IMG/VR virus record: IMGVR_UViG_3300040801_004532
Location: 124,001-188,000 of that record
DNA: 64,000 nt
Reading direction: 5' to 3' (one strand)
Both the position numbers and the translations under genes were made by a program. Position 1 is the stretch's first letter. Each line of letters opens with the position of its first letter. Positions 24,574 to 47,374 of the stretch are shown here, piece by piece. The notes beneath the pieces were generated by a model. It saw only the letters and a list, made by a program, of their open reading frames with translations, had not been told where the DNA came from and ran no database searches.

Positions 24574-24639
24574 TACACAATTGATTGTTTAGCGCTAAAC
24601 AACCAAAACAACAACTTACCAAAACACAAGGAGTTTTCA

Positions 24640-25764: not shown

Positions 25765-25791
25765 CCGGATCATTTTCAATTCGATTAACCC

Positions 25792-25821
25792 GGGGGCCTG
25801 ATCTTTAGGCCCCCATTTTTT
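25792..25821 (+). terminator. Rho-independent terminator
   Basis: GGGGGCCTG-ATCTT-TAGGCCCCC followed by ATTTTTT. Confidence 0.75.
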
Positions 25822-25855
25822 CAAACCTCAAGATACACGAAGGGAGAAAGTACAA

Positions 25856-26314: not shown

Positions 26315-26380
26315 CAACAATGTTACTAACATTTTGTATTTTGGTAACAGTTTGAACAACCTACACCAAGGAGAAATTCA

Positions 26381-27301
26381 ATGCGGAAACTTTTCGTGAT
26401 CGCAACAGCAGTAATGTTTCTTTTCGCAATCCCCATGATTGCCCTTGCGGATTCCAACCATGCAACGGCAACCTCGGGTTCCAGTGCCAACGGATACAAC
26501 AACGGCCAAAACCAAGGACAGGATCAGGGTCAAACCCAAATGCAGGGTGTGGGCCTGAACGATGTCGGGAACATCAAAGACTCATTCAACAGCCAAGGCA
26601 TGCGCGGATTCGCCATCCCCGGCGAGATCATGTACGGCCCCTTGCTCAACTACTACCAGCAGGGAACCGCCAGCGGCTCCTTTCAGCGAATCGAAAACCT
26701 CATTCTTTACAGCAACGTGTTCACCGAGGGATCCCTTGAAAGCATCCTTTCCGGGATCGATCATGTGAAAGCTGAAATGAAAGTCGCCGCCGATGTCGCC
26801 CCGGCCAAACCGGCCAAACAGGATGGCGCGACCCGTTTCATCATGGTCGTTGTCACCATGCCGGATCAGTCCGGAAATGTTGCCAAACTGGACAACGTGA
26901 AGTTCAAAGGCTTCGTCAACGCCTGGAGCAGGGACCAGTACACCGCAATGCCTGAAGTCATGGCGGCCGCCGCCCTGGAAGCCCTGAAAGCGGGCTGCAA
27001 TGTGATTCAGTTCACAGCACAGGGCGCCTCCCGAGACACCGTATCCAGTGGATGGGGTGTTGGGATTTCGGCCACTTCCGTGAGCGTTTCTGGTTCTCAG
27101 AGCAGTTCAACCACCGGTACCGCCGGCATCGGTTACTCCGCCGGTCAGGCCGGAATGCGGGACAAACCCTGGCTGCAAGCCTTCGGACTGGTCGCCCCCG
27201 AAATGGATTACCCGGGTGATCTGACCGCCGCTGCAATGCCAGCAGGCAAACCCCAAACCGGTAACCACACCAAGTACGGAAGCGCTCAGGCCAAGAAGTA
27301 A
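26381..27301 (+). CDS. Exported protein with Gln/Gly-rich N-terminus and Ser/Gly-rich beta-hairpin-like segment
   Basis: MRKLFVIATAVMFLFAIPMIALA-D signal; NGQNQGQDQGQTQMQG. Confidence 0.7.
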   Translation: MRKLFVIATAVMFLFAIPMIALADSNHATATSGSSANGYNNGQNQGQDQGQTQMQGVGLNDVGNIKDSFNSQGMRGFAIPGEIMYGPLLNYYQQGTASGSFQRIENLILYSNVFTEGSLESILSGIDHVKAEMKVAADVAPAKPAKQDGATRFIMVVVTMPDQSGNVAKLDNVKFKGFVNAWSRDQYTAMPEVMAAAALEALKAGCNVIQFTAQGASRDTVSSGWGVGISATSVSVSGSQSSSTTGTAGIGYSAGQAGMRDKPWLQAFGLVAPEMDYPGDLTAAAMPAGKPQTGNHTKYGSAQAKK

Positions 27302-27350
27302 TCAACCGGCCTGGTGTTCTTAGATGCCATTCCGGTATCCTAGAACAAAA

Positions 27351-27463
27351 TGAAAATGCTAGTCCCGATTGGGCTAAAGGCCGACGTCCGTGGGCCGCTG
27401 CCGCCCCGAATAAAAGCATCTGCGGCTTTAAGGTAGGGTGAAAGGGTGCTGCTAGCATTTTCA
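27351..27463 (+). ncRNA. Candidate structured small RNA
   Basis: Perfect 12-bp closing stem TGAAAATGCTAG/CTAGCATTTTCA around a GC-rich interior; promoter-like motif at 27341 and terminator directly after. Confidence 0.45.
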
Positions 27464-27519
27464 AATCTGAGGGGGTGGGAAGCACCAGCGCGTCTTCGCG
27501 ACCCCCTCAGATTTTTTTT
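27463..27519 (+). terminator. Rho-independent terminator
   Basis: AAATCTGAGGGGGT...ACCCCCTCAGATTT running into a T8 tract. Confidence 0.75.
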
Positions 27520-31782: not shown

Positions 31783-34782
31783 ATGAAACTTTTAAATGTT
31801 GAAAGCTTTACAAGGGGGCTAACTCCCGTAACTTCCACTGAATTAAAAACCAGATCTGGAGAACCACATCCAGAAGGATTATTTAGTGAAAAGATTTTTG
31901 GTGTGGAAGGTTCGTTGGACCGAAGCAAACGATATTCTTACATCAATTTAAATTCAAAAATCGTTCATCCTGCAGCATATAAACTCTTGAAACGTATTGA
32001 CTCACGAATTGAAAAATTCCTTAACACAGAGGAAAGTTATTCAGTAGATTCGGAAGGGAAAATGATAGCAGATGATAATGGAGTATCAGGAATTTCAGAG
32101 TTTATCGAAATATTTCCCAAAATAAAATTAAGGGGCGGAACAGCGGCCAGAGATAAGATTAATAAGGTTATAACTGATAGCTACAAAACAGGAACTCTAT
32201 TCATTGATAAACTCCCTGTTGTTCCGCCAGATTTCCGTCCGATGTACACAGACGAGGGAGGTAACTTAATTGTTGATGAACTAAATACATATTATCAAAA
32301 AATAATTAGAAAGGCTGCTCAAGTTAAAAGTGTTGGATCAGGAGGAGCACTTTTTAATCTATTGAATTTTTATTTGCAAATTGCAGTAAATGAACACGAT
32401 GAATATGTAAGGACAAAAATTGCAAAAAAGTCTGGACTAATTCGTTCTAACATGTTAGGAAAACGAGTTGATTTTAGTGCCCGTGGTGTTATTACTCCCG
32501 GACCACAATTAGATGTAAATGAAATAGGCGTTCCACTAAGATCAGCTGTAACTCTTTTTCAACCTTTTCTTATTCATTATTTCTTATTCTCAAAAAAATA
32601 TCCATATAAAGATATACTTGAGGAAGAAGTTAAAAAATTTACAGACTCCGAATTATCAGTTGATACACTTAACCGAGTGATTAAATCAATAAGAGTTGGA
32701 GATAAAGTTCCAGATAGACTTGAAAATTTATTTAAGCAAGCCGCTGAAGTTGTAATGAAGGGACGAGTTGTATTAGCAAAACGAGACCCTGCTCTTCATG
32801 AGGGTTCATACAGAGCTTTTAGACCAGTATTAGTTGATGGGCATACCATTCAAATGTGTACTCTCCAGGTTGGAGGTTTCAATGCGGATTTTGATGGTGA
32901 TATGATGGCATTATATCACCCTCTAACTAAAGAATCACAACAAGAAGCCAAAGAGAGAATGATGCGTGGGGTTGGCAGCAAGAATAGTAGACATGTAACA
33001 TTTGAACTTTCAAAAGAAATGGCTGTTGGACTTTATACTATGACAAAAAATGTTAGACGAGGGTCATCTCCAATTGCAGTTAGTGAGGAGGATCTTGAAA
33101 AAGCCAATGATCCATATATTCCCGTAAAGTATAGAGGAAAAGCTACAACAATGGGGCGAGCGATTTTCAATAGTGTATTTCCAACAAACTTTAGATTTAT
33201 TGATCAATTAGTAACAAAGAAAACAGTGAATAACTTGATACCTGAAATTATTGATCAATATGGCGATGAAGTGGCTGAAAAGGTTTTTTCAAAACTAGAA
33301 AAAATTGGCTTTAAATTTGCAACCATTATTTCTCCCACATTAACACTTGATATGATTGATATGCCTGATAGTATCGAACGAATCAGAGAAAAATTAAAAA
33401 ATTCAAGCCCGGGTGAAGCTGATAAACTACTTCGGGATGGCGAAAAAATAATGATTCAACATTTAAAAGATACTGGTTTATATGATCTCATTGAGTCAGG
33501 AGCAGGAAAGGGATGGGGACAACCAAGACAGATATTAGTTTCAAAGGGTGTAATATCAGATCCAAAAGGAAATGTTCTTCCGCCAATTGAAGGATCATTT
33601 GCTGAGGGTTTGAAAACAACAGAATTTTTTAATGCTGCATCCGGTGCTAGAAAAGGTATGGCGGACCGTGCATTGAATACAGCAGACACTGGTTATTTTA
33701 CAAGACAGCTTGTTTATGTTTTATCCCCAGTTGAAGCAAGCCCAACTATAAGAGATTGTAAAACAAAAAGAACTTTAAATTTAAGATTGACAAATGATCT
33801 AATAGATCGACTATCTGGACGATATATAATCGAGAGAGGAAGAGTTGAAAAATTTTCGTCAAGATATAAGGCTGGGGATACTATTAGATTAAGAACTCCA
33901 ATATTTTGTGAAACAAAAAAGATTTGTCATACCTGTTACGGAGATCTTTTAAAGAGACATAAAAGTCCCTTTGTTGGAATCATTGCTGGAGCATCAATTG
34001 GCGAGCGTGGAACACAGTTAATCATGAGAACATTCCATACTGGTGGTGCTGCAACATTTGCTCAATATGATGTTTTACAAGATATTTTTGACAATGATCC
34101 ATTAATTGAAGTAGACTTGAAGAAATACCTTACTCAATATGAGGATAAACTTATAGCTGCAAAACCATGTAAATTAACAATTGATTTGACCAATTATGAT
34201 ATGAATAATAATATCCAAATTAAAAGAGATTTAGTTTGGGTAAATCATTTGTTATCAAGAATTGAATATGATGATACAATCTTTAACATATCATTAGATT
34301 ATCCCGTTGAATTAACAAGAACTACAATGAATCAGATTGGAAAAGAATATTTAGAGTTTACATTTGCAAAGGATGATATAATGCTTGAAATTCCATTGCA
34401 AACTACAGAAATCAAAGAGCAGGTAAATTATGTTGGCAGGTTGTTGGGAGGAAAGGTTGTTTATAAAGATCCATCCCATTTATTGACAAAGATATTAAAA
34501 ATTTATGGTGGTAAGGTTTCTGATTTGGACCTTGTACATTTTGAGGTCTTGCTTTCACAAGTTTTACGAGATAAAAGAAATGATATGTTGCCAGCTCGAT
34601 TGGGACCAACTTGGGATCCAGTAATGATGAATATTAAAAATGTAGTATTTTCTTCAGGGTTCCTTCAGGGGTTGGCATTTGAAAATGTAAATAAGGCGAT
34701 AGAGACTGGGCTCATTTCAGAAGGAGAGCTTGAACCATCTATTCTCGGAAGGGTGTTGACAGGCGAGGTTATAACAAGATAA
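31783..34782 (+). CDS. rpoC: Phage multisubunit RNA polymerase, beta'-like subunit
   Basis: GLFSEKIFG, LPVVPPDFRP, LGKRVDFSAR.VI, catalytic NADFDGD, TADTGYFTRQL, trigger loop IGERGTQLIMRTFHTGG. Confidence 0.95.
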   Translation: MKLLNVESFTRGLTPVTSTELKTRSGEPHPEGLFSEKIFGVEGSLDRSKRYSYINLNSKIVHPAAYKLLKRIDSRIEKFLNTEESYSVDSEGKMIADDNGVSGISEFIEIFPKIKLRGGTAARDKINKVITDSYKTGTLFIDKLPVVPPDFRPMYTDEGGNLIVDELNTYYQKIIRKAAQVKSVGSGGALFNLLNFYLQIAVNEHDEYVRTKIAKKSGLIRSNMLGKRVDFSARGVITPGPQLDVNEIGVPLRSAVTLFQPFLIHYFLFSKKYPYKDILEEEVKKFTDSELSVDTLNRVIKSIRVGDKVPDRLENLFKQAAEVVMKGRVVLAKRDPALHEGSYRAFRPVLVDGHTIQMCTLQVGGFNADFDGDMMALYHPLTKESQQEAKERMMRGVGSKNSRHVTFELSKEMAVGLYTMTKNVRRGSSPIAVSEEDLEKANDPYIPVKYRGKATTMGRAIFNSVFPTNFRFIDQLVTKKTVNNLIPEIIDQYGDEVAEKVFSKLEKIGFKFATIISPTLTLDMIDMPDSIERIREKLKNSSPGEADKLLRDGEKIMIQHLKDTGLYDLIESGAGKGWGQPRQILVSKGVISDPKGNVLPPIEGSFAEGLKTTEFFNAASGARKGMADRALNTADTGYFTRQLVYVLSPVEASPTIRDCKTKRTLNLRLTNDLIDRLSGRYIIERGRVEKFSSRYKAGDTIRLRTPIFCETKKICHTCYGDLLKRHKSPFVGIIAGASIGERGTQLIMRTFHTGGAATFAQYDVLQDIFDNDPLIEVDLKKYLTQYEDKLIAAKPCKLTIDLTNYDMNNNIQIKRDLVWVNHLLSRIEYDDTIFNISLDYPVELTRTTMNQIGKEYLEFTFAKDDIMLEIPLQTTEIKEQVNYVGRLLGGKVVYKDPSHLLTKILKIYGGKVSDLDLVHFEVLLSQVLRDKRNDMLPARLGPTWDPVMMNIKNVVFSSGFLQGLAFENVNKAIETGLISEGELEPSILGRVLTGEVITR

Positions 34783-34794
34783 CGGAGAATTTGA

Positions 34795-37700
34795 ATGATC
34801 AAATATGACTCATTAATTCAGTACACAAGAGTTGTAGATTCATTAAGGTTTCCTCTAGATCGAGACAAGCCATTTTTAATGGTCTATTTCTCTGAAAACT
34901 CCTTGTTTGCAAAAGATTATCCAAAGCTTAATTTGAGGAGAGTTGATTTTCGGCATGTGATTGTTCCGTTTACAAGATTGCCTGTCACAAGGTTGACTCC
35001 AGAAGTACGCGCAGCTTATAAAGAGTACAACCTTCGTCCATATAGTATGCAAATGAAATTCCCCAGTGATAAAAATCTTATCTTTGATACTACATTTTAT
35101 ACCAACACAGTTGATAAAACATATAAACCAAATACATACAGACAAAGAGCTGGATTCTTAATTCAAAATATTCTTAGTAAATCTTTTCAATCATTTCCTG
35201 ATAATTATAGAAAGATTCTTGCATATGCGGTCGATAAAAACGAGCCTCTCAATACATTTGTAAATAGAAAAATTTTCCCGATTTTAAGACAACTACGTTC
35301 AAAAGAAATTTATTTTGATGATCTTCTTTTGATTGTCATTGGTGATACAGATGCCAGATATAGACTTTTGGTAAAAGATCAAGATTATAAATTTCAACGC
35401 GTGGTTCAGTATGTAAAAACAATAAAGGCTGATGATACAGAAGAAGAAAAAGAACAGGAAGTTATCAATGCAACAATGAAGATAATGAAGCATGTAGGGT
35501 CCGATGTTGCTAAACCAGATACTGTTAAATATGCTGTTAAGGATTATCTTGACAAGAATCCAAGTATGGTTGATAAAATTGCTAATGGTGAATTAAGTAG
35601 CGAAGAGATGGAAAAGCTTACTGCTGCATCAATATTTTTTAGAACAAGTGGGGATTTAAGCAAAGCCAATCGGTTGGCAAAAGCGATACCAGCAGGAAAG
35701 GCAAAGACAGCCGTTCAGAGAATTAGCAGACAATATGAAGATGACCTTCTTAAGAAACAACCATCAGAGAATTTAAGCGACTATATTTATAATCAAACTG
35801 AACCTTTGGCAGAAATGGTTGATAAAAAAACACCTGAGCATATCTTTGATAAACGGAGAATCGACTTTGAAACAAATTTGAAAAAAGATATGTCTAATGC
35901 ATTTAAGGTTCTTGAGAATAGGGATATCCCGTTATCATTTCAGTCAATATCAATTAAACCAAAACCTCAAAAGGCCGGGGAGCTTTCAAAGTCTGATGAA
36001 GCCTTAGTTGAAATCAAACTAAAAGATAAGAGCGGTAGGGTTCACGACGTTCAACTTTCAATCCCTAGAATTGATCCGAATACAGGAACATTCAGGGTTA
36101 ATGGTAAACGAAAATGTATGATCAATCAAATTGTCCTGAATCCAATTAGTTTTCCCAAGGCATATGACTCAAAATTTGAAAGTTCGTATTCAAGTTTTCA
36201 TATTTATAGCAAACGAACCAAAAAATTAAAATACCTTGAAGTGTATATGGGTTCATTTAGGATGCCTCTTATGATCCTACTTTGCTACGCATTTGGTTTT
36301 CAGGAAATCTTGCAGCAATATGGAATAAAAGCACAAATAGTAAAAGAAAAGCCAAATAAAGATAAATATTTTTCAGAAGTTCCTAGTTCATATCTACTTT
36401 TTGAAAATGTTGATACAGAATTAAAAGAAGAATTAGTATCTTCATTTATCCATGCAAAGATTAATCAATATGAAATTGATAAGGAATTTTTATCTAAAAA
36501 ATATTTTAATGATTTGATTATGAAGATGACTGGACGTGTTGATGCTACATACCTAATTTCAAATAACATTGAAAATATAGTTGATCCAATAGTAAGGCAG
36601 GTCTTGATAAACCAACAATTACCATTTGAGTTACCACACATCATTCAATATATGTCAGAAAAGGTTGTAGCTGGTTTTGTTCAAGATAGAAACGATCTGA
36701 CAAATCAACGAATACGAAATTCGGAACTTCTTGTTCATTTGGCTCAAAAGCAATTATTAACAGCATATACTGAATACAGGCAACAATATTTAGCAGGAAA
36801 CAAAGATGCAACATTAAATGTTCCAGAGGGAAAAGTTTTAAGACAATTCGTTGGTCTGGAAATTGTACAAGATATGGAGTATGCGAATCCTGCTGAGGAG
36901 ATGGCTGCTATTACAAAAACGTCTCCGGTAGGTAAAACTGTTGGAGGTATTCCCGATAAACAAGCTGTCCAGTTAGATGCAAGAAATGTTCATACAACAT
37001 ATTTCGGAAATATTGATCCGCTTGATACAGCAGAAGGACCAAACATTGGTATTACCCAACAATTAACTGTTGATGCATATGTCACATCGGCTCGTGGATT
37101 GTTTGGAAGAAAGGCAATGTTGGATTCTGAATCCTCGGGGATTCTTTCAACATCTTCAGCTCTTGTCCCATTTATTGAAAACAATGAAGGTGCAAGAATT
37201 ATCATGTCTTGTAACCAGGTTAAACAGATGTTGCCTTTAAAAAACCCAGAGCCACCAATAGTCCAAACAGGTTATGAGTCATTATTAACAAATGTTCTAT
37301 CTGACAGCTTTGTTAAAAAATCACCATGTAAAGGAAAAATTGATAAAATAACTAATGATTATATTGACATAATTTGTACTGGCAATAAGAAACAGAGAAT
37401 AGATATTTCGCCTGTTCAATTGAAGTCTGGTAGCGGTAAAAACACCTTAAGTACATTCAAACCAATTGTTTCAAAGAATCAGTCTGTTAAAGAAAAGCAG
37501 ATTATTGCTGAGGGGAGTTGTATCTCTGGCGGAACAATTTCAATGGGTAGAAATTTGGCTTGTGCATATATGCCATACAAAGGATATAACTTTGAGGATG
37601 GTTTAGTAATAAATGAAAAATTGGTTAGCCAAAATAAACTAACATCGCTTCATGGTATTGATGTTGAGGCAACAGTCGAAAAAAATGATCGAGTAATTAG

Positions 37701-38880
37701 TATTGTTGAGCTGGGAAAACACACAGAAAAGGGCGACCCACTTTTTAGAAAATTTCCTGGTGATATTGATGAACTATTGGGTTATGACCAAGAAGAGGAT
37801 GAAAGTGTTGATACATATGATGGTCAAATTATTATCAAAAGTCCAGGTGGTCGTGTAGTTGATATTGATGTTTTCTCTAATCTTCCGCCTGATCATTTTC
37901 CAGCATTAAAACCTTTGATTGAAAGAACCAATAAAAAATTCAAAAAGCCAGCAAAAGATAAATTTACAGATAGGGGTATATCAATCAAAGGTATAAAAAT
38001 AGTTTTTAAAGTAGAACAAGAATTGCCAATTGGAATTGGAGATAAACTGTGTAATAGATTTGGTAATAAGGGAATAATTTCTTTAATTGAAAAAGATGAA
38101 TTAATGCCAAGAACTCCTTGGGGTGAAAGGCTTGATATTATTCTTAATCCCCTTGGGGTAATAAGCAGAATGAATATGGGCCAAATTTATGAGTTGTATT
38201 GTGGGTTGATTTCAAGATATGTTGCCAATCAAATTAAACGAGGAGCAAACAAATCTGAAGTAATCTCAATGTTTAGCGCAGTTGTAAAGGGGCTTGACAC
38301 CTCTCCAAATAATAAATTCAGTACAAAATTTTTAGCGAATTTGAAAAAATTAAGTACAGCTCAATATAATAAAATGATTGATCAAATTAAAAATGCAGGA
38401 TATATTCCAATTATTGTACCTCCATTTAAGGCGCCTTCTCACAAACAAATATTGCCCTTACTGAAAAAATTTAATCTGAAAACTGGATATAATTTATCAT
38501 TGCCTGAGTTTAATACAAAAACAAAAAACTCTGTTCCGTTTGGTTATTTGTATATTGCAAAGTTGGAGCATATTGGTAAGGATAAATTACACTCAAGATC
38601 AACCGGACCAACTGTTGGGAAGATATTACAACCAACCGGAGGGAAAAGAAGGGAGGGCGGACAAAGAATGGGAGAAGGTGATACATGGTCATTAGCATCA
38701 TATAATTGTCCACATTTATTATCAGAATTCTTTGGGCCACTATCAGATGACGTGGTAACAAAAAATGAAATCCTTACTGATATAATTCAAACTGGTGAAG
38801 CTGATTTTAGAGCTACAAAATCATCACCAACCAAAGATTTACTAAACGCATATTTCACATCGTTGATGTTGGGGGGATAA
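34795..38880 (+). CDS. rpoB: Phage multisubunit RNA polymerase, beta-like subunit with N-terminal extension
   Basis: GTFRVNG, TAEGPNIG, GYNFEDG, GDKLCNRFGNKG, LNPLGVISRMN, KLEH, GGQRMGEGD. Confidence 0.95.
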   Translation: MIKYDSLIQYTRVVDSLRFPLDRDKPFLMVYFSENSLFAKDYPKLNLRRVDFRHVIVPFTRLPVTRLTPEVRAAYKEYNLRPYSMQMKFPSDKNLIFDTTFYTNTVDKTYKPNTYRQRAGFLIQNILSKSFQSFPDNYRKILAYAVDKNEPLNTFVNRKIFPILRQLRSKEIYFDDLLLIVIGDTDARYRLLVKDQDYKFQRVVQYVKTIKADDTEEEKEQEVINATMKIMKHVGSDVAKPDTVKYAVKDYLDKNPSMVDKIANGELSSEEMEKLTAASIFFRTSGDLSKANRLAKAIPAGKAKTAVQRISRQYEDDLLKKQPSENLSDYIYNQTEPLAEMVDKKTPEHIFDKRRIDFETNLKKDMSNAFKVLENRDIPLSFQSISIKPKPQKAGELSKSDEALVEIKLKDKSGRVHDVQLSIPRIDPNTGTFRVNGKRKCMINQIVLNPISFPKAYDSKFESSYSSFHIYSKRTKKLKYLEVYMGSFRMPLMILLCYAFGFQEILQQYGIKAQIVKEKPNKDKYFSEVPSSYLLFENVDTELKEELVSSFIHAKINQYEIDKEFLSKKYFNDLIMKMTGRVDATYLISNNIENIVDPIVRQVLINQQLPFELPHIIQYMSEKVVAGFVQDRNDLTNQRIRNSELLVHLAQKQLLTAYTEYRQQYLAGNKDATLNVPEGKVLRQFVGLEIVQDMEYANPAEEMAAITKTSPVGKTVGGIPDKQAVQLDARNVHTTYFGNIDPLDTAEGPNIGITQQLTVDAYVTSARGLFGRKAMLDSESSGILSTSSALVPFIENNEGARIIMSCNQVKQMLPLKNPEPPIVQTGYESLLTNVLSDSFVKKSPCKGKIDKITNDYIDIICTGNKKQRIDISPVQLKSGSGKNTLSTFKPIVSKNQSVKEKQIIAEGSCISGGTISMGRNLACAYMPYKGYNFEDGLVINEKLVSQNKLTSLHGIDVEATVEKNDRVISIVELGKHTEKGDPLFRKFPGDIDELLGYDQEEDESVDTYDGQIIIKSPGGRVVDIDVFSNLPPDHFPALKPLIERTNKKFKKPAKDKFTDRGISIKGIKIVFKVEQELPIGIGDKLCNRFGNKGIISLIEKDELMPRTPWGERLDIILNPLGVISRMNMGQIYELYCGLISRYVANQIKRGANKSEVISMFSAVVKGLDTSPNNKFSTKFLANLKKLSTAQYNKMIDQIKNAGYIPIIVPPFKAPSHKQILPLLKKFNLKTGYNLSLPEFNTKTKNSVPFGYLYIAKLEHIGKDKLHSRSTGPTVGKILQPTGGKRREGGQRMGEGDTWSLASYNCPHLLSEFFGPLSDDVVTKNEILTDIIQTGEADFRATKSSPTKDLLNAYFTSLMLGG

Positions 38881-39504: not shown

Positions 39505-39753
39505 ATGTCAGAGATTACAGTAAAGGTTGGAAATGTTAGTTTAACCGCATCGAACAATGACTTGGTTTCTGTTGACGAAACACCAGATGGAGTTTCGTTT
39601 AGTTTTAAAGGTGGCCTTCAACTGCTCTTTACCGACCCATACATGCCATCTTCAGCAAAACAAATTATCAAAAATACTGCAGATAACATGAGCGGAAAAT
39701 TGGTTTTTGAATTAGACAATGCAAAACGTCCTGCCAGAGTTGAAGCAGTTTAA
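39505..39753 (+). CDS. Hypothetical protein
   Basis: 82-aa ORF with RBS GAGGG. Confidence 0.5.
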   Translation: MSEITVKVGNVSLTASNNDLVSVDETPDGVSFSFKGGLQLLFTDPYMPSSAKQIIKNTADNMSGKLVFELDNAKRPARVEAV

Positions 39754-39774
39754 ATTTCATTTAATCAAATACAT

Positions 39775-39800
39775 CTATATATATAAATAACTGAGATAGG
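39775..39800 (+). promoter_or_regulatory. Putative promoter of the RNA array / vWA operon
   Basis: CTATATATATAAATAACTGAGATAGG, near-identical to 23638-23661. Confidence 0.55.
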
Positions 39801-39812
39801 TGATTTATAACT

Positions 39813-39899
39813 AAAAAATTGGAAGACTTGTTTGTAGATTCAGGAATGCCACCGTTGAGGTAACCAACTCCAACTACAACAACCAGCTTCCAATTTTTT
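39813..39899 (+). ncRNA. Y-RNA-like array unit 1 (single-hairpin cargo)
   Basis: 13-bp stem AAAAAATTGGAAG/CTTCCAATTTTTT; GAAGACT; inner TTGTAG/CTACAA; TTCAG. Confidence 0.7.
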
Positions 39900-39908
39900 C
39901 ACTTTTTT

Positions 39909-40015
39909 AATCAGAAGACTTTGTGTAATTTCAGAGGTGATTGGTTCACCATTGCTCTACAAAAGCGACGCACCCGTTCGACTCGGGATAATAATTACAC
40001 GTTTTACTTCTGATT
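39909..40015 (+). ncRNA. Y-RNA-like array unit 2 (tRNA-like D, anticodon and T arms, no acceptor stem)
   Basis: AATCAGAAG/CTTCTGATT; GTGTAATT/AATTACAC; cargo GGTG-ATTGGTT-CACC, TTGCT-CTACAAA-AGCGA, CCCG-TTCGACT-CGGG. Confidence 0.75.
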
Positions 40016-40023
40016 TTAATTTT

Positions 40024-40115
40024 ATTCTAGAAGACTATTTGTAGTTTCAGAAGATACTTGAACGTATCACGCACTTGTAAATGCGCAAACCTACTACATT
40101 CAATTCTTCTAGAAT
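40024..40115 (+). ncRNA. Y-RNA-like array unit 3 (two-hairpin cargo)
   Basis: ATTCTAGAAG/CTTCTAGAAT; TGTAGT/ACTACA; cargo GATAC-TTGAAC-GTATC and CGCA-CTTGTAAA-TGCG. Confidence 0.7.
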
Positions 40116-40123
40116 CCTTTTCA

Positions 40124-40258
40124 AACCTGAAAGACTGTTGGTGGTTCCAGACAAAGAAGCTCGATTGGTTGAGCATTTGCTTAATGTGCAAACGGTTGTG
40201 GGTTCAAGTCCCATCATTGTCACCAAAAGGTGTAAACCACTGTCCTAACTTTCAGGTT
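40124..40258 (+). ncRNA. Y-RNA-like array unit 4 (encloses a full tRNA-like cloverleaf)
   Basis: AACCTGAAAG/CTTTCAGGTT; GGTGGTT/AACCACT; TCCAG. Confidence 0.75.
40150..40225 (+). tRNA. Degenerate tRNA / tRNA mimic, anticodon AAT (nominal Ile), encoded CCA
   Basis: GACAAAG AA GCTC-GATTGGTT-GAGC A TTTGC-TTAATGT-GCAAA CGGTT GTGGG-TTCAAGT-CCCAT CATTGTC ACCA; 76 nt; lacks U8, A14, A21 and has one acceptor mismatch. Confidence 0.6.
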
Positions 40259-40265
40259 CCATTTT

Positions 40266-40334
40266 GATTGATGGGCTGAGTGTGATTTTAGTGATCTTTC
40301 GGGGAGGGCTTGATCACATTCAGACCCATTAGTC
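40266..40334 (+). ncRNA. Long imperfect hairpin between the array and the vWA gene
   Basis: GATTGATGGG/CCCATTAGTC plus CTGAGTGTGAT/ATCACATTCAG with G-U pairs. Confidence 0.5.
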
Positions 40335-40439
40335 ATAACACAAACCTTTTAGCGAAAGAGGGTTCATTTGCAACATTCTAATTTCTAAAAAAATTGGATA
40401 TAAGAGTTTTACGTCGAAATTACGAAAGGAGGAAGGCGA

Positions 40440-41957
40440 ATGACGAGACAGCAGTTATCTATTGATTCTGGGATACTTCAGTTTGCGCCAAAAGGGGCGT
40501 TCTATGAAGAAACTGATGAACAATTCCAACAGGTTTCAAGGATGTGGAATGAGCTATTCAATTATGACAGAACCCTTTTTTGTTTAATCACTCTTCTTGG
40601 AGGGACAGGATTTTCAAAGGGGGTAATGAGCCACATTCTATTGTCAAATCCCCAAAGCTCCACAGGAAGAGAACTTATCCCAGAAGGTCTTTCGGTTGAT
40701 TATGAAACCGAGGTAATTCTATACAATCTATCAAAGGAGAAAACCCCAAGAGCATTAAAAAATCTTTTGATGTTGACCGGCCGTGAAGGTCAAACAAAAG
40801 TAAATAATGCAAGAACAAGGAAACTAATCCTTGAATATATCTTTAATCGAGGTCATGATTCCCTCGACAATTTGGCTGTAAATTATAAAGGAAAATTAAA
40901 AACTCTTGTTCGTCATGCCCTTGGAAGACAAGATCTGGCAAAGATTCTAATGGGCGACGACCAACTTTTTCAAAAGTGGATTGGTCGTTATCATAAAAAT
41001 GCACTTCCGGTTGTTTTATACCTTTTCGATAGACCAATACCAAACGATCAAGTGTTTGCATATTATAAGAAAGTTGAACAGGTGTTAAAGCTAAAGGAAG
41101 CAGCACAAAGACGTGACGTTGAAGCGTTTCGACATTTCATGGATGGGCTTCCGAGACTAACAGTTCTCGGATATCGAAATACATATAAGGTTCCAATCGA
41201 AAAAAGTGAAATTTTTGAAAAAACCCAAATGTCAAATCGTCAAGCCATTCAGATGGAAGCAGCGGCGAAACGATCTGGCACAAAGGTCAAGGTAAACTAT
41301 AAAAACCAAGACGTTTATGATTTATGGAAAGCATTGTATTTTAAGCTACAGCAAAGCGACGATGAAAATTTGGATAAGATTGTTGAGGCAATCGGAGAGA
41401 AGGATGGAAATAAACTTGACATCGGCGAAGTGAGTGTTGTATTTGATGTGTCAAGATCCATGGTTGGTAGCGACCAACGACCCCTTCATCCATTCCTTAC
41501 AGGGTTATCCATATTGTCTGTGCTGGATAATATCCAAAATGTTTTCTATGTTGGCGGAACATCAATTCCAACAAAAATCAATGACAAAGAAATGTACTTT
41601 GTTTTTCCATCAAACGAAACAGCATTGTGGAAGGGACTGGTAGATGCTGTAGCGTCTGGGTCAAAGAAAATTATTGTCATTTCAGATGCTTATGAAAATT
41701 CTCCAAAGGGTATGTTTCAACATGTATATAACCATTTCAAAGACAAGGAGAACATAGAGATTATTCATATTAACCCAGTATTCTCGGCTGATTCACAACA
41801 AGGGTCTGCTAGAAAATTAGCAGATGATATTGAGCCGCTTCCTGTCTCAAGTTATAAATTTCTCGAGACAGAAATTATTTTTAAAAGAATGTTGGAAAAT
41901 AAGGATCTCGTGAAAAACTTACTCGTTGGGAAATACAGAAAACTGATAGGAGGTTAA
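40440..41957 (+). CDS. Helical domain + C-terminal vWA protein; putative divergent Ro60/TROVE-like RNA-binding protein
   Basis: MIDAS VFDVSRSM, ETAL, ISDAYEN in the last ~180 aa; basic helical N-terminal ~320 aa; Ro60-like size; strong RBS. Confidence 0.55.
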   Translation: MTRQQLSIDSGILQFAPKGAFYEETDEQFQQVSRMWNELFNYDRTLFCLITLLGGTGFSKGVMSHILLSNPQSSTGRELIPEGLSVDYETEVILYNLSKEKTPRALKNLLMLTGREGQTKVNNARTRKLILEYIFNRGHDSLDNLAVNYKGKLKTLVRHALGRQDLAKILMGDDQLFQKWIGRYHKNALPVVLYLFDRPIPNDQVFAYYKKVEQVLKLKEAAQRRDVEAFRHFMDGLPRLTVLGYRNTYKVPIEKSEIFEKTQMSNRQAIQMEAAAKRSGTKVKVNYKNQDVYDLWKALYFKLQQSDDENLDKIVEAIGEKDGNKLDIGEVSVVFDVSRSMVGSDQRPLHPFLTGLSILSVLDNIQNVFYVGGTSIPTKINDKEMYFVFPSNETALWKGLVDAVASGSKKIIVISDAYENSPKGMFQHVYNHFKDKENIEIIHINPVFSADSQQGSARKLADDIEPLPVSSYKFLETEIIFKRMLENKDLVKNLLVGKYRKLIGG

Positions 41958-41961
41958 TTAT

Positions 41962-42930
41962 ATGGCAAATATCTTTGAAACCCTAAAAATCAAAGGAGTT
42001 GGAATCGGTTCTATTCAGAGCGTTGATGAAATGACAGTCATCCCTTTGATTGGTGAAGACCGTGGGGATGTTGCCAGTCCGTCCAGTTTAAAATTTCAAA
42101 GAACCACAAGTTATGGTTCAATGCAGTTTAAAAATGAAGACAGTCGCCCAGCTATTGTGCCATCCAATTTCATGATACGAGGTCGGGGAGCACAAGATCA
42201 TGCAATGGCCTCATCTGGAGTTCTGAAATCAAGGGAAGTGAAAACATTTGAAACTGCTTGTTGTATTGAAGAAACACAGGGCGGCTTCCTAACTCATGAA
42301 GGAAATGAAGAAGATATTCTACCTATAGAACTACGTCGAAATCTCTTGGATGCAAACAAGAGACGAGACAGAAACTATGGAAAATTGTGGAGCAATATTA
42401 AAGATTGGCTCAATGGGCTTACCCTACAAAGAAAAAGTCATGGCGCCCATTTAAGAAATTTCTATGATGATCATAACGTAAGAACAGCACTTGAAGCATT
42501 TGCTGCTGAGTTTGAACCGGTTGATGGTCAAATCGGGGCAATCATTATGTTTTCTGGGATCCCTGTCGGCATTGAGATTATGCCAACAGCAGATCATTGG
42601 AACTCATATTGGCAGCAGCTTCTGCGAGGGTGTTATGGTTCAGAACTTCTAAGGATGAAGATGTTGGGCAAAGTTTCACAGTCAACTCTAATTTTGCCTG
42701 ATATTCCAGATGATGCAAATCCTATGGAAGTCAAAAATATTTTAGAAACATTTATGAACCACATTCAACAGGAAGTTCTGCCTGTAATTCAGAACATTAA
42801 TATCACATCCAACACAAGAGTATCATCAGATGGATCACTTAGAACTCAGTTAGTTAGAACTGATGGCGGGGGTGGAGGAGATGTTATTATTCAAGAATCA
42901 ACCCCAATTTATGTCTCAATTATTTTATAG
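41962..42930 (+). CDS. ARPP-like (DUF6569-related) protein
   Basis: MTVIPLIG, F.NE....IVP, G.QDH, ACCIEE.QG, GQIGAII...GIE pattern recalled from ARPP families. Confidence 0.45.
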   Translation: MANIFETLKIKGVGIGSIQSVDEMTVIPLIGEDRGDVASPSSLKFQRTTSYGSMQFKNEDSRPAIVPSNFMIRGRGAQDHAMASSGVLKSREVKTFETACCIEETQGGFLTHEGNEEDILPIELRRNLLDANKRRDRNYGKLWSNIKDWLNGLTLQRKSHGAHLRNFYDDHNVRTALEAFAAEFEPVDGQIGAIIMFSGIPVGIEIMPTADHWNSYWQQLLRGCYGSELLRMKMLGKVSQSTLILPDIPDDANPMEVKNILETFMNHIQQEVLPVIQNINITSNTRVSSDGSLRTQLVRTDGGGGGDVIIQESTPIYVSIIL

Positions 42931-44851: not shown

Positions 44852-46108
44852 ATGACCGACGACACAGCCAAAGAAGAATTTAAATACCATGAACGATTGA
44901 ACATCCCCGTCCTTACAATCGAAAAGATCAAACAGCTTTTGAAGAATGATATTGCTGACACGCTACATGCGTGGAAGGAAGGGAGAAAAGTAGACAAACA
45001 ATGTTACAGGATCATTGGCCCTGCTGGTGTCGGCAAGACACAAATTTGTGGTCAAATCGCTGCTGAATTGACAAATGAACTATTCGGGGAGTGGAACAAG
45101 GCACGACCCACTCCAGAACATAAACTATTTGATATGATTATGGTCAAAGCTCCTGTTCTATCAAGGGATGACTTTATCATTCCGTTTCCGGTAACAGATG
45201 GCAAGGACTTTTCATTCAGAATGCTATATTCTGACTTTGTTCCGAAAGAGGTTGGATCATTTGGAATATTTGTCATTGATGAAGTATCAAGAGGTGATCA
45301 TCAACTCCAGCAGCTTCTATGGCAGGTCCAAAATGAGTACGCCGTCCACAATCTGCAATTCCCAGAAGGATGGTTTGTGATCTCAGTAGACAACCCTGAT
45401 GACTCAGAGTACTCCATGGATACGCTTGAAGATGCTGCTGGTTTACGAAGGCAATTGCATCTATACGTTGAGGTAAGTCCTATCGACTTCCTCAACTATG
45501 CAATTGCAAATGATTTTCACCCTCTTGTCATTGAGTGGATTCAGATGCGTCCGGAATATCTATACGATTTCAACGCTCAAAAGGTCGGGTCGGTTTATGC
45601 AAACCCAGCCAGCTATGAGAAGCTTTCGGATCATTTGTGGAAAATGCAAATGAGACGAGGAAGCTTGGATTATGATGAAATCGAAAACAAAGCATCTGGG
45701 CTTCTCAATACCAATATGTCCCAACTCTTTGTCTCGTTTGCAAGAGACAAGAAAGACATCAATCCAAAAGATGTATTCTATGAATTTGATAAGGTTGAAA
45801 AACAAATCAAGGCTCTATTAAAAGAAAACAATATGTCCAAATTGGGCGAGCTTATGATCGGGTTCTGTACGTTTATGACAACATCAATGCCCGAGTATGA
45901 CGATAGAAAGTTAGAAAACGTCTATAAGTTCCTATTGATGATGCCCATTGATACAGCGGCTCTTTTTATCTCACAAATTGATGGCTTTGACCGGTCATCA
46001 AAAGCATTTAAATACATGACTCAAATCCATCTCACTCTTCTGAAAAAGCATCCACAATACAAGAAAGAGTTCTATGATCCAATCGTAAGAGCTGGCGATG
46101 GACGATAG
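44852..46108 (+). CDS. MoxR-like AAA+ ATPase
   Basis: GPAGVGKT, FVIDEVSR, VDNP, LRRQ. Confidence 0.8.
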   Translation: MTDDTAKEEFKYHERLNIPVLTIEKIKQLLKNDIADTLHAWKEGRKVDKQCYRIIGPAGVGKTQICGQIAAELTNELFGEWNKARPTPEHKLFDMIMVKAPVLSRDDFIIPFPVTDGKDFSFRMLYSDFVPKEVGSFGIFVIDEVSRGDHQLQQLLWQVQNEYAVHNLQFPEGWFVISVDNPDDSEYSMDTLEDAAGLRRQLHLYVEVSPIDFLNYAIANDFHPLVIEWIQMRPEYLYDFNAQKVGSVYANPASYEKLSDHLWKMQMRRGSLDYDEIENKASGLLNTNMSQLFVSFARDKKDINPKDVFYEFDKVEKQIKALLKENNMSKLGELMIGFCTFMTTSMPEYDDRKLENVYKFLLMMPIDTAALFISQIDGFDRSSKAFKYMTQIHLTLLKKHPQYKKEFYDPIVRAGDGR

Positions 46109-46117
46109 GGGGAAAAC

Positions 46118-47374
46118 ATGCAACCCTCAAGTTCAGTTACAAGTGAACGAATAAAGGTTCTGATTGCCAAATTCGTCCTAAAATACAATTATTGGGGGTA
46201 TCTATTTTCTCGAGTCAGGAGACAGGCGGATCCAAACATGCCATCAATTATGGGCATTGCACCTGAACCTGACGGATCAATTTGTTTATATTATAACCCC
46301 CCATTGATTGATAATACAGACGATGAAAACATCACCAAGGTGATTGAGCATGAAGGACTGCATCTATTAAATAAGCATGTTCCAAGGCTTATTAGAATTC
46401 TTGCAAATGATCCTGATCCATTAAGAAGGGAATCTAAAGCAGAAATATGGAATATTGCAGCTGATTGCTGTGTAAACACACAAGGGAAACTAGGTGAAAG
46501 TCTTACCATTAATGGCAAACCCTGGCCCATGTGTCTCCCCGCAAGATATAAAATGCCTGAGGGACAAATAACCGAGTTTTATTATAACTGGTTGCTTGAA
46601 AATGCAAAAAGCCAACCTATGCCAATGATCGGGGACCATGGAAAATGGACCAAAAATCTAAAGGGAGTTGCTGATCTTAGTGCTCTCAGTAGAAAAGTAG
46701 ATCAACATATAAGATCAATAATCAAAGAATCAGCAAAGACCTTCAACAAGGATCGTGGAAGGTTGCCGTCACATATTGCTGATCTTATTCAGGGAGCTCT
46801 AGCTCCACCAAAAGCACCATACTATCAAATCATTAGAAAATTAATCAAGGGGTCAAGATTAACAAAATTCAAAAGATCCCCAACCAAAATAAATAGAAAA
46901 CGAACTTATACATTTCATTTGGCGTCAATGCCAGATCTCCCTCAAATTTCGCCCTTTCCTGGAAAGAGTCGAGATTTTACATTTGATATTGTCGTTATGA
47001 TTGATACATCAGGAAGTATGTCAAACGATGATATAAAAGAGGGATTGAGTGGTATTAAAAATATCGTTGAAAATGATAGACATTGTCATACCACAGTCCT
47101 GGAAGTTGATGCTGGCGTTGAAAAAGAATATGAATGTAAAAAAATAAGGGATATTCAATTTAATGTAAAGGGACGAGGCGGAACAACACTAACCCCTGGT
47201 TTAGAAAGAGCCAGAGAACTTGGTTGTGATGTTTGTCTTGCATTTACGGATGGGTATACCGAAAATATCAATGCCTTAAGCAGAAAAAGGCTACCTAAGA
47301 AACTTATTTGGGTTATAACCAAAGGTGGGTCGCCTAATCAGATTAATAAAACAGGATTTGTGGTGAAAATATGA
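46118..47374 (+). CDS. DUF2201-type metallopeptidase + vWA protein (AAA partner)
   Basis: HEGLH (HExxH), WNIAADCCVN, IDTSGSMS, GRGGT, FTDG. Confidence 0.8.
   Translation: MQPSSSVTSERIKVLIAKFVLKYNYWGYLFSRVRRQADPNMPSIMGIAPEPDGSICLYYNPPLIDNTDDENITKVIEHEGLHLLNKHVPRLIRILANDPDPLRRESKAEIWNIAADCCVNTQGKLGESLTINGKPWPMCLPARYKMPEGQITEFYYNWLLENAKSQPMPMIGDHGKWTKNLKGVADLSALSRKVDQHIRSIIKESAKTFNKDRGRLPSHIADLIQGALAPPKAPYYQIIRKLIKGSRLTKFKRSPTKINRKRTYTFHLASMPDLPQISPFPGKSRDFTFDIVVMIDTSGSMSNDDIKEGLSGIKNIVENDRHCHTTVLEVDAGVEKEYECKKIRDIQFNVKGRGGTTLTPGLERARELGCDVCLAFTDGYTENINALSRKRLPKKLIWVITKGGSPNQINKTGFVVKI

What the first reader, a model, noticed from the sequence alone, without database searches (positions are those of the whole stretch)
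39844..40225. Cargoes form a graded series from one hairpin to a whole tRNA, with non-bacterial A34 anticodons
Seen: unit 1 has about one hairpin; unit 3 has D-like plus anticodon-like hairpins (8-nt loop CTTGTAAA); unit 2 has D, anticodon and T arms; unit 4 is a full cloverleaf with CCA. Units 2 and 4 share the D-loop ATTGGTT, and their anticodons are ACA (39959-39961) and AAT (40183-40185). Established: A34 anticodons are rare in bacteria outside tRNA-Arg(ACG). Unit 4 also lacks U8/A14/A21. Inference: tRNA genes were captured into the handle and eroded, and they are not meant to decode. Unit 4 might still be excised by RNase P and 3' processing, since CCA is encoded.
Basis: partly seen in the sequence, partly recalled or inferred. 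Interest (0 to 1): 0.75.

Follow-up and report, generated by a model that had tools for sequence, protein, structure and literature searches.

The report
Phage Y-RNA-like array with tRNA mimics
A jumbo phage carries five small RNA genes in a row, all sharing one closing stem and holding cargoes from almost nothing up to a complete tRNA look-alike; they sit just upstream of a very divergent Ro60-type ring protein, so they are most likely its Y-RNA partners and not decaying or decoding tRNA genes.

Summary
Window 39817-40335 holds five tandem units, not four. Each is closed by a covarying two-part stem with an invariant ACU...UUCAGA motif. The cargoes are one weak hairpin, D+anticodon+T arms, two hairpins, a full cloverleaf with NCCA (ARAGORN Ile-AAT; Rfam tRNA 53.2 bits), and a minimal loop.

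Every unit class is conserved with compensatory changes, so erosion is not supported. Non-decoding is supported. In 50 full-tRNA units position 34 is A in 16, position 8 is A in 27, and the triplet changes between close relatives (AAT, GAT, CGG) while the stems covary.

The units are best read as Y-RNA-like partners of an orphan Ro60-fold protein. They differ from YrlA in motif, topology, copy number and an obligate ARPP-1 neighbour. This is a new variant of a known kind.

The parts
39775..39791 (+). Conserved AT-rich element (CTATATATATAAATAAC); candidate promoter for the RNA array
   Evidence: Invariant in the relatives at 84% and 80% protein identity. Only two copies in the 248-kb genome, both on the + strand. 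No sigma-70-type site in 39600-40500. The promoter function is inferred.
39817..39895 (+). Unit 1: handle plus a short, weakly structured cargo
   Evidence: Fold z -3.67. CM R1 26.3 bits, E 0.004. The class alignment shows the handle covarying in 11 of 16 pairs, while the cargo aligns only among close relatives.
39909..40015 (+). Unit 2: handle plus D, anticodon and T arms. The handle's upper stem stands in for an acceptor stem. Triplet ACA at 39959-39961.
   Evidence: Fold z -4.33. CM R1 61.4 bits. In the 29-member class, 24 of 27 pairs have compensatory changes.
40025..40114 (+). Unit 3: handle plus two hairpins (40053-40068 and 40070-40085; the second has the loop CTTGTAAA)
   Evidence: Fold z -4.50. 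CM R1 42.5 bits. The handle covaries in 16 of 17 pairs; the cargo evolves fast.
40125..40257 (+). Unit 4: handle enclosing a complete tRNA-like module. Handle invariants are ACU 40134-40136, U40146, C40148, G40150, A40151 and A40248.
   Evidence: CM R1 119.7 bits. 27 of 30 pairs compensatory in 22 sequences. Per-column counts on 50 members.
40150..40225 (+). tRNA-like module of unit 4: 7-bp acceptor stem with an A6/A67 mismatch, A8, G14, U21, anticodon loop TTAATGT (AAT at 40183-40185), T loop TTCAAGT, A73, CCA 40223-40225
   Evidence: ARAGORN. Rfam tRNA 53.2 bits. The acceptor stem and NCCA are conserved in the class. The Levitt 15:48 pair covaries.
40265..40335 (+). Unit 5: handle-like long hairpin with minimal cargo. 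The window copy deviates at two motif positions (GGCU for GACU, UUUAG for UUCAG).
   Evidence: Fold z -6.55. The orthologous elements in L014 and L015 score as units (33.7 and 34.7 bits). In the 20-member class, 14 of 18 pairs are compensatory.
40440..41957 (+). 505-aa Ro60-fold protein: helical-repeat ring domain plus a C-terminal vWA domain with MIDAS residues D336-x-S338-x-S340, T354 and D416
41962..42930 (+). ARPP-1 domain protein, the constant downstream partner of the Ro60-fold gene
   Evidence: Pfam PF20208, E 2.5e-25. It follows the Ro60-fold gene in 77 of 77 loci with enough sequence, including the 25%-identity relative L001. It is also present in the distant loci L099 and L100.

Best explanation
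The region is a five-gene array of Y-RNA-like non-coding RNAs that serve the Ro60-fold protein encoded just downstream.

Shown:
- Each RNA pairs its 5' and 3' ends into a common handle. The handle is a roughly 9-bp lower stem, an asymmetric internal loop that begins with an invariant ACU and ends with an invariant A, a 6-9-bp upper stem, and then UUCAGA.
- The handle is the only part shared by all units and by all clades of the protein family.
- Two cargoes are tRNA mimics in the natural, non-permuted orientation. In unit 2 the handle replaces the acceptor stem. In unit 4 a whole tRNA with NCCA is nested in the handle.
- In these mimics the L-shape determinants (G18G19, T-loop, Levitt pair, U33, R37) are under selection, while the anticodon triplet is free to change. 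They are shape mimics, not decoders.

Inferred:
- The handle is the docking site for the ring protein, as the bulged stem of a Y RNA is for Ro60.
- The variable cargo is the effector module that recruits or occupies other factors.
- The array is made as one transcript from an AT-rich phage promoter and is cut in the roughly 11-nt U-rich spacers.
- The RNPs work with the always-adjacent ARPP-1 enzyme on RNA, most likely tRNA, surveillance or repair during infection.
- RNase P and 3' trimming may open unit 4 at its acceptor end.
For: Protein:
- The Ro60 fold covers both domains, and the only full-length structural matches are Ro60/Rsr/TROVE.
- A MIDAS motif is present.

RNA-protein linkage:
- 262 CM hits in 74 sources, all on the gene's strand and upstream of the gene.
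- The motif is enriched about 49-fold there.
- The handle cluster is unique in the 248-kb genome.
- The same handle design sits upstream of a 25%-identity homologue in a 462-kb phage.
- It also sits upstream of a GC-richer distant clade, with at least 6 copies carrying T-arm cargo.

RNA structure:
- Compensatory changes in 27/30, 24/27, 16/17, 11/16 and 14/18 pairs for the five classes.
- The acceptor stem has at least 6 of 7 pairs in 36 of 50 units, with 31 different strands.
- G15 always pairs with C48 (13 of 13), and no shuffle out of 5000 reaches the observed Levitt compatibility.

Non-decoding:
- A34 in 16 of 50, A8 in 27 of 49, and high entropy at positions 35/36.
- AAT, GAT and CGG among close relatives.
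- L026 and L089 are 93% identical overall, yet their units differ at only four bases, all consecutive and all in the anticodon loop.
- A separate, normal tRNA set exists in the genome.

Precedent:
- Y RNAs with tRNA-like modules lie next to Ro60 in more than 250 bacteria and phages, and one of them is cut by RNase P and receives CCA (PMC4201824).
- Phage phiLo Ro60 binds two upstream Y-like RNAs and host PNPase (PMC12135203).

Spacing: spacers have a median of 11 nt.
Against: - No binding or expression data exist; everything here is comparative.
- The protein is Ro60-like by predicted fold only. TM is about 0.45, rmsd about 6 A and sequence identity 11-15%. The Pfam TROVE model misses it and 10 distant relatives.
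- The classical Ro-binding motif GNCGAAN0-1G/CGAA is absent, and no Rfam Y-RNA model matches.
- ARPP-1 co-occurs as strictly as the Ro60-fold gene, so comparison alone cannot say which protein binds the handle.
- In some distant members (L099, L100) model R1 finds no unit.
- The record encodes no RtcB. It was not searched for a PNPase, so the downstream effector is unknown.
Confidence: 0.68

Rival explanations
1. The handle RNAs are partners of ARPP-1 (or of an ARPP-1 plus Ro60-fold complex), or they act on their own as decoys or sensors for host tRNA-targeting nucleases. In this reading the Ro60-fold protein is not the direct handle binder.
For: ARPP-1 follows the Ro60-fold gene in 77 of 77 loci and also in distant clades. 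ARPP is predicted to act on ribose/ADP-ribose moieties (PMC9503650). Among close pairs the anticodon triplet diverges 2-3 times faster per site than linker positions, as expected for a bait that tracks host nucleases.
Against: No RNA-binding role is known for ARPP, and its published contexts lack structured RNAs. A closing stem with an effector module next to a Ro60-fold gene is the Y-RNA arrangement. The pairwise divergence test uses few, non-independent pairs.
Confidence: 0.15
2. Unit 4 is a genuine decoding tRNA made from a precursor with a long leader-trailer duplex. The other units are by-products or processing scaffolds.
For: Unit 4 has a full cloverleaf, and its 53.2 bits lie within the range of the phage's own tRNAs, 47.6-72.3. 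The class conserves NCCA, U33, R37, G18G19 and the T loop.
Against: The triplet is not conserved among orthologues with the same body. A34 occurs in 32% of the class and A8 in 55%. The window copy has A8/G14/U21. The same handle carries non-tRNA cargo. The unit sits by the Ro60-fold gene and not in the tRNA cluster, which already has Ile-GAU and Ile-UAU.
Confidence: 0.07
3. One reading: tRNA genes were captured into a repeat and are decaying, so the series is a set of pseudogenes at different stages.
For: In this one window the cargoes do look like a deletion series. Units 2 and 4 share D-arm sequence.
Against: Every stage is a conserved class with compensatory substitutions in its stems. The order of the classes is kept across relatives. 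Unit-2-type and unit-4-type RNAs coexist in most loci.
Confidence: 0.05
4. The array is a cis-acting 5' leader that regulates the Ro60-fold mRNA, or a set of terminators or RNase III sites, and not a set of trans-acting RNAs.
For: It lies on the same strand immediately upstream of the gene. Spacers are short. No separate promoters were found.
Against: Unit number varies from 1 to at least 5. In L001 the units are separated from the gene by several ORFs. The only terminator-like site the scan reported is the D arm of unit 4, not a handle, and the handle stems are AT-rich. A conserved tRNA L-shape is not needed for a terminator.
Confidence: 0.05

Closest known systems
YrlA-type bacterial and phage Y RNAs bound by Rsr/Ro60 (Chen et al. 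2014, PMC4201824; YrlA structure preprint 10.1101/312249)
   Same: They are encoded beside a Ro60-type gene. The 5' and 3' ends form a stem with an internal loop. A second module mimics tRNA, with D/T arms, elbow contacts and a covarying Levitt pair. There is often more than one Y RNA per locus.
   Different: YrlA is a permuted tRNA: the protein-binding stem continues from the anticodon stem, the acceptor stem is a closed loop, and there is no anticodon loop or CCA. Here the handle joins at the acceptor end, the anticodon stem-loop is intact and free, and unit 4 has its own acceptor stem with NCCA. The motif is ACU...UUCAGA and not GNCGAAN0-1G. Arrays reach five or more units. No Rfam Y-RNA model matches.
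[quoted passage not shown]
   Same: It is a Y RNA with a 7-bp acceptor-like stem that tRNA-processing enzymes treat as a tRNA end.
   Different: There, CCA is added after cleavage and nibbling. Here NCCA is encoded and conserved (29 of 50 units). Processing was not tested here.
Thermus phage phiLo Ro60 with Yrl1/Yrl2 (PMC12135203)
   Different: phiLo Ro60 is recognisable by sequence. It has two RNAs with the CGAA motif, and no tRNA-like module is reported in the passages read (the search term tRNA-like occurs zero times). No ARPP-1 partner is described.
Deinococcus radiodurans Yrn1
   Same: Its tRNA-like part keeps an anticodon-arm-like stem-loop, a topology closer to the one here.
   Different: Yrn1 has a 6-nt loop, no full D arm and no variable arm. 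It is a single RNA with a different binding motif.
Phage tRNA gene clusters
   Same: Unit 4 passes tRNA detectors.
   Different: The real cluster lies about 90 kb away and has canonical U8/A14 (read from the sequences). Unit 4 is embedded in a handle, and its triplet is not conserved among orthologues.

Membership tests
Y RNA (bacterial/phage, YrlA type) | Encoded adjacent to, and on the same strand as, a Ro60 orthologue | tested here: met
   All 262 CM hits are on the gene's strand, upstream of the gene. The neighbour has a Ro60 fold. Orthology rests on fold only.
Y RNA (bacterial/phage, YrlA type) | 5' and 3' ends pair into a long stem interrupted by an internal loop or bulge | tested here: met
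   The lower stem, internal loop and upper stem covary in all five classes.
Y RNA (bacterial/phage, YrlA type) | Conserved Ro60-binding motif GNCGAAN0-1G (CGAA) in the stem | tested here: not met
   No occurrence in 39801-40350. The invariant positions are instead ACU, UUCAGA and a 3' A.
Y RNA (bacterial/phage, YrlA type) | At least one RNA per locus has a tRNA-like module with tRNA tertiary pairs | tested here: met
   All 48 hits above 85 bits are single unit-4-type matches from 48 different sources. G18G19, the T loop and the Levitt pair are conserved or covary.
Y RNA (bacterial/phage, YrlA type) | YrlA topology: the binding stem continues from the anticodon stem, the acceptor stem is a closed loop, and there is no anticodon loop or CCA | tested here: not met
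   Here the handle joins at the acceptor end, the 7-nt anticodon loop is intact, and NCCA is present.
Y RNA (bacterial/phage, YrlA type) | Match to a curated Y-RNA covariance model | tested here: not met
   cmscan of 39700-40460 at E up to 10 lists tRNA and chance hits only.
Y RNA (bacterial/phage, YrlA type) | Physical binding to the Ro60 protein | not testable with these tools
   Needs EMSA, co-purification or a structure.
Ro60 / TROVE protein | Helical-repeat ring domain followed by a vWA domain | tested here: met
   AF2 model pLDDT 82.8. The top 13 Foldseek hits and top 10 VIA hits are all Ro60/Rsr/TROVE and span model residues 5-503.
Ro60 / TROVE protein | MIDAS motif in the vWA domain | tested here: met
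   D336, S338, S340, T354 and D416 are invariant in 37 sequences.
Ro60 / TROVE protein | Sequence match to Pfam TROVE (PF05731) | tested here: not met
   No hit for the protein, for 37 family members, for 10 distant members or for the six-frame genome.
Decoding (elongator) tRNA | Cloverleaf that passes tRNA detectors | tested here: met
   ARAGORN and Rfam tRNA at 53.2 bits.
Decoding (elongator) tRNA | Near-universal U8, A14 and A21 | tested here: not met
   The window copy has A8, G14 and U21. In the class, position 8 is A in 27 and U in 22, A14 is present in 35 of 48 and A21 in 26 of 50.
Decoding (elongator) tRNA | Anticodon conserved among orthologues and of a type used in bacteria | tested here: not met
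   AAT, GAT and CGG in close relatives. 20 of 27 close pairs differ. A34 in 16 of 50.
Decoding (elongator) tRNA | Aminoacylation and use on ribosomes | not testable with these tools
   Needs charging assays or polysome profiling.

The most novel reading that the evidence does not exclude
Huge phages carry a previously unrecognised Ro60-like RNP system. One ring protein plus ARPP-1 is loaded with a panel of exchangeable RNA modules. The fast-changing anticodon loop of the tRNA mimic would be a specificity element under diversifying selection. It could be a bait or sensor for host anticodon nucleases, or a guide that selects which damaged tRNAs are handled. That would make the array a counter-defence device against tRNA-targeting immunity.
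Probability: 0.18. Interest if true: 0.85.

Novelty: new variant of a known kind. Interest (0 to 1): 0.62.

Why it matters
Ro60/Y-RNA particles are conserved from bacteria to humans, yet the role of the tRNA-like module of bacterial Y RNAs is still open. Four things here bear on that question.

- There is a large protein family with a Ro60 fold that sequence models miss: 466 cluster representatives, all unannotated.
- It comes with a new handle motif.
- It comes with natural panels of one to at least five RNAs. These present the same handle with graded cargo, including a non-permuted tRNA mimic with a free anticodon loop and an encoded CCA.
- That series is a ready-made experiment for asking which part binds the ring, which parts recruit tRNA enzymes, and what the module is for.

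The strict pairing with ARPP-1, a predicted enzyme acting on ribose/ADP-ribose, links Ro60-type RNPs to a chemistry not previously associated with them. For annotation, it means lone tRNAs with odd anticodons next to such genes in phage genomes should not be counted as decoders.

Tried and rejected
Searches and scans that found nothing:
- Sequence searches of the 505-aa protein against PDB chains, Pfam and NCBIfam found nothing, and PHROGs gave only a weak hit to a family of unknown function. Only the fold comparison identified it.
- A single-sequence scan of viral contigs found no relative. The alignment-based scan did.
- DNA search of the phage collection gave no match.
- Pfam TROVE found nothing on the six-frame genome or on family members. 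The record has no RtcB.
- The sigma-70 promoter scan found nothing. The single terminator-like hit is the D arm of unit 4.
- The Rfam sensitive scan of the array gave only tRNA and chance hits.
- Rfam and Pfam on the GC-rich island at 24.3-27.5 kb gave nothing.

Analyses that were uninformative or weak:
- U-tracts after units are no more frequent than before them (92 against 87 of 150). They say nothing about termination.
- Model R1 gave only a weak hit in distant members (20.3 bits in L097/L098) and none in L099/L100. The L097 handles were found by repeat analysis instead.
- The cargoes of the unit 1 and unit 3 classes could not be aligned beyond close relatives, so no consensus cargo structure is claimed for them.

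Considered and rejected:
- CRISPR-like repeats: the units are closed stems with cargo, and there are no spacers.
- Retron or DGR: no reverse transcriptase is nearby, and the anticodon changes are not specific to adenines.
- Eroding pseudogenes: rejected on covariation.
Full report
**1. What is in the sequence**

The window is bases 124001-188000 of a 248-kb jumbo-phage record. Between a small ORF ending at 39753 and a 505-aa ORF starting at 40440 lies a 686-nt gene-free stretch. It contains tandem units. Each unit is closed by pairing of its own 5' and 3' ends.

| Unit | Coordinates | Cargo |
|---|---|---|
| 1 | 39817-39895 | one weak hairpin |
| 2 | 39909-40015 | D, anticodon and T arms |
| 3 | 40025-40114 | two hairpins |
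| 4 | 40125-40257 | full tRNA-like cloverleaf |
| 5 | 40265-40335 | minimal loop |

- The 5' sides of the units share AAGACU-N-UGUAG/A-UUCAGA (families D1, D2 and D5).
- Each unit folds far better than shuffles, with z -3.2 to -4.5 for units 1-4.
Unit 2's triplet ACA is at 39959-39961. Unit 3's second hairpin has the 8-nt loop CTTGTAAA.
- Unit 4 holds a full cloverleaf at 40150-40225 ending in CCA. ARAGORN calls it tRNA-Ile(AAT). It scores 53.2 bits on Rfam tRNA and is the only tRNA in the window.
- Reading the sequence, unit 4 has A8, G14 and U21.
It is a long hairpin (z -6.55) that belongs to the same repeat class (section 3).

**2. The neighbour is a Ro60-fold protein**

- The 505-aa product has no hit in Pfam, NCBIfam or PDB sequences, and only a weak PHROGs hit to a family of unknown function.
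- It belongs to a large family with no functional annotation: 248 proteins in the word-index search and 466 representatives at 50% identity in the exhaustive profile search.
- An alignment of 37 members shows invariant D336-x-S338-x-S340, T354 and D416. This is a vWA MIDAS signature.
- AlphaFold with that alignment gives pLDDT 82.8 and pTM 0.79. The model has helical repeats over residues 24-320 and an alpha/beta domain over 331-505.
- In Foldseek against the PDB, all 13 significant hits are Ro60, Rsr or TROVE structures aligned over the full length.
- The Pfam TROVE model does not detect the protein, its family, ten distant members or the six-frame genome.
- So it has the Ro60 architecture, but by sequence it is an orphan family.

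**3. The RNA array goes with this protein everywhere**

- I fetched 12 viral and 80 metagenomic loci, plus loci for the two closest relatives.
- The loci at 84% and 80% protein identity have the same five elements in the same order.
- A simple motif detector finds 202 handle motifs in the 96 kb upstream of the genes, against 17 in 393 kb elsewhere in the same loci. With a complementary 9-bp closing stem the counts are 161 against 3.
- A covariance model built from 22 unit-4-type RNAs finds 262 matches in 74 sources. All are on the gene's strand and upstream of the gene. The four window units score 119.7, 61.4, 42.5 and 26.3 bits.
- The 48 matches above 85 bits come from 48 different sources, one unit-4-type RNA each.
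- A homologue of only 25% identity, in a 462-kb phage, also has one. It carries a variant handle, GA(A/G)AACU...UUACAGA.
- A still more distant, GC-richer clade has at least six GAGACU...UACAG handles with T-arm-like cargo in the 2-kb gene-free stretch upstream of its gene.
- In the window's own genome, the handle cluster occurs only here.

**4. Every unit type is a conserved, covarying class**

| Class | Pairs with compensatory changes |
|---|---|
| Unit 4 type | 27 of 30 |
| Unit 2 type (29 sequences) | 24 of 27 |
| Unit 5 type (20 sequences; last, minimal-cargo unit) | 14 of 18 |
| Unit 3 type (handle only) | 16 of 17 |
| Unit 1 type (handle only) | 11 of 16 |

- For the unit 1 and unit 3 types, the cargo aligns only among close relatives.
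- Many loci carry a unit-2-type and a unit-4-type RNA together.
- So the graded series is a set of distinct RNA species. It is not a decay series.

**5. Anatomy of the handle and of the tRNA mimic (50 best unit-4-type RNAs)**

- Handle invariants, in window coordinates:
  - ACU 40134-40136 (50 of 50);
  - U40146 (50 of 50);
  - C40148 (49 of 50);
  - G40150 and A40151 (48 of 50 each);
  - A40248 (50 of 50).
- The classical bacterial Ro-binding motif GNCGAAN0-1G is absent.
- tRNA features under selection:
  - G18G19;
  - T54-T55-C56 and A58;
  - U33 (47 of 50);
  - a purine at position 37 (49 of 50);
  - a Levitt pair in which G15 always faces C48 (13 of 13), with no shuffle out of 5000 reaching the observed compatibility.
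- The acceptor stem has at least 6 of 7 pairs in 36 of 50 units, built from 31 different 5' strands. NCCA follows directly in 29 of 50.
- In the window, the stem starts with the GA of the UUCAGA motif.
- Features not under tRNA-type selection:

| Position | Counts |
|---|---|
| 8 | A 27, U 22 |
| 14 | A 35 of 48 (the window is the only G) |
| 21 | A 26, U 15, G 9 |
| 34 | U 30, A 16, C 3, G 1 |

- Positions 35 and 36 have entropies of 1.75-1.80 bits, the same as unpaired linker columns.
- Close relatives carry AAT, GAT and CGG on an otherwise conserved body, while the T stem changes by compensation.
- Two loci that are 93% identical overall differ in this unit at only four bases, all consecutive and all in the anticodon loop.
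- Among 27 pairs with body divergence below 15%, the triplet diverges 2-3 times faster per site than linker positions. This is suggestive only. The pairs are few and not independent.
- The phage's real tRNAs (28, plus a tmRNA) sit about 90 kb away. They include Ile-GAU and Ile-UAU.

**6. Interpretation**

- The arrangement is a Ro60-type gene with small RNAs just upstream on the same strand. Each RNA has a terminal stem with an internal loop plus an effector module, and at least one is tRNA-like. This is the Y-RNA arrangement described for more than 250 bacteria and phages (PMC4201824) and for Thermus phage phiLo (PMC12135203).
- I therefore read the handle as the docking stem for the ring protein and the cargo as the effector part.
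- Shown here: the structures, their conservation, the linkage to the gene, and the lack of decoding constraint.
- Inferred: the binding, co-transcription from the conserved AT-rich element at 39775-39791, cutting in the spacers of median 11 nt, and any downstream function.
- ARPP-1 follows the gene in 77 of 77 loci and in the distant clades. It is a predicted enzyme acting on ribose or ADP-ribose moieties, and its published contexts do not include Ro60 (PMC9503650).
- Given that pairing, a role in handling damaged or modified RNA, most likely tRNA, during infection is my best guess.

**7. How it differs from known Y RNAs**

- YrlA is a permuted tRNA mimic. Its protein-binding stem continues from the anticodon stem, its acceptor stem is a closed loop, and it has no anticodon loop and no CCA (10.1101/312249).
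- Here the orientation is the natural one. The handle joins at the acceptor end, and the anticodon stem-loop is intact and exposed.
- In unit 4, a complete acceptor stem with encoded NCCA is nested inside the handle.
- The binding motif differs, no Rfam model matches, arrays reach five or more units, and the protein is not detectable as TROVE by sequence.
- The nearest precedent for processing is M. smegmatis YrlA, which RNase P cleaves and which then receives CCA.
- I therefore file it as working like a Y RNA/Ro60 system. It is a new variant, not a member of the YrlA family.

**8.

- 'Not meant to decode' is supported.
- 'Captured and eroded' is not supported.
- Possible RNase P excision is plausible and untested.
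- The A34 anticodons are a by-product of an unconstrained, or possibly diversifying, triplet and are not a designed feature. They are common across the class (32%).

**9. Limits**

- There are no expression or binding data.
- The Ro60 assignment rests on a predicted model with modest TM (about 0.45).
- The handle binder could be ARPP-1 or a complex.
- The fast-triplet result needs a tree-based test.
- The host is unknown. The tmRNA and bacterial-type tRNAs in the genome suggest a bacterium.

Noticed in passing
window 24300-27500: A roughly 3.2-kb island of GC 0.51-0.58 sits in a genome of about 0.33 GC. Its three + strand ORFs (24640-25764, 25856-26314, 26381-27301) have no Pfam hit, and there is no Rfam match. 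It could be a foreign insertion or a large structured RNA. It remains unexplained.
   Followed up: partly
genome C1:53842-82768 (outside the window): A cluster of 28 tRNAs plus a tmRNA (tag ADDYYTEVALAA), including a tRNA with anticodon CUA that ARAGORN labels Pyl. This is an amber-suppressor-type tRNA, which may indicate TAG reassignment in this phage.
   Followed up: no
window 39775-39791; genome C1:91274: CTATATATATAAATAAC occurs only twice in the genome, both times on the + strand, and is invariant in close relatives upstream of the array. It is a candidate promoter for the phage's own RNA polymerase.
   Followed up: partly
window 31783-38880: Two large multisubunit RNA-polymerase genes lie in the order beta-prime-like (999 aa, Rpb1 domains) then beta-like (1361 aa, Rpb2 domains). 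This is the reverse of the bacterial rpoB-rpoC order. They are syntenic with the array across the clade.
   Followed up: no
window 44852-47374: A MoxR-like AAA+ ATPase is followed by a metallopeptidase-vWA (DUF2201) protein. This pair was reported for group 2.2 jumbo phages as a likely assembly chaperone (PMC7824862). It is probably clade synteny and not part of the RNA system.
   Followed up: partly
L026:561-564 vs L089 (unit at L026:507-624): Two loci that are 93% identical overall differ in this unit at only four bases, all consecutive and all in the anticodon loop (ATTGAAA vs ATACTCA). This looks like a multi-base replacement and not point drift.
   Followed up: partly
L097:2591-3440: A distant, GC-richer clade of the protein family has at least six handle copies and several T-arm-like hairpins, but no ARAGORN tRNA, in a 2-kb gene-free stretch. 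The cargo repertoire differs between clades.
   Followed up: partly
window 40053-40068; unit-3-type and unit-2-type RNAs in A5 and A6: Many non-tRNA cargo hairpins carry 7-nt loops of the form C-U-U-N-N-A-A (for example CUUGAAA, CUUGUAA), like the anticodon-arm loop of unit-2-type RNAs. An anticodon-loop-like hairpin may therefore be the minimal functional cargo.
   Followed up: no
protein family hits P0113, P0115: Some family members are deposited in MAGs labelled Thermoplasmata and Heimdallarchaeaceae archaeon. They are probably phage contigs binned into MAGs, since this phage has a tmRNA and bacterial-type tRNAs.
   Followed up: no
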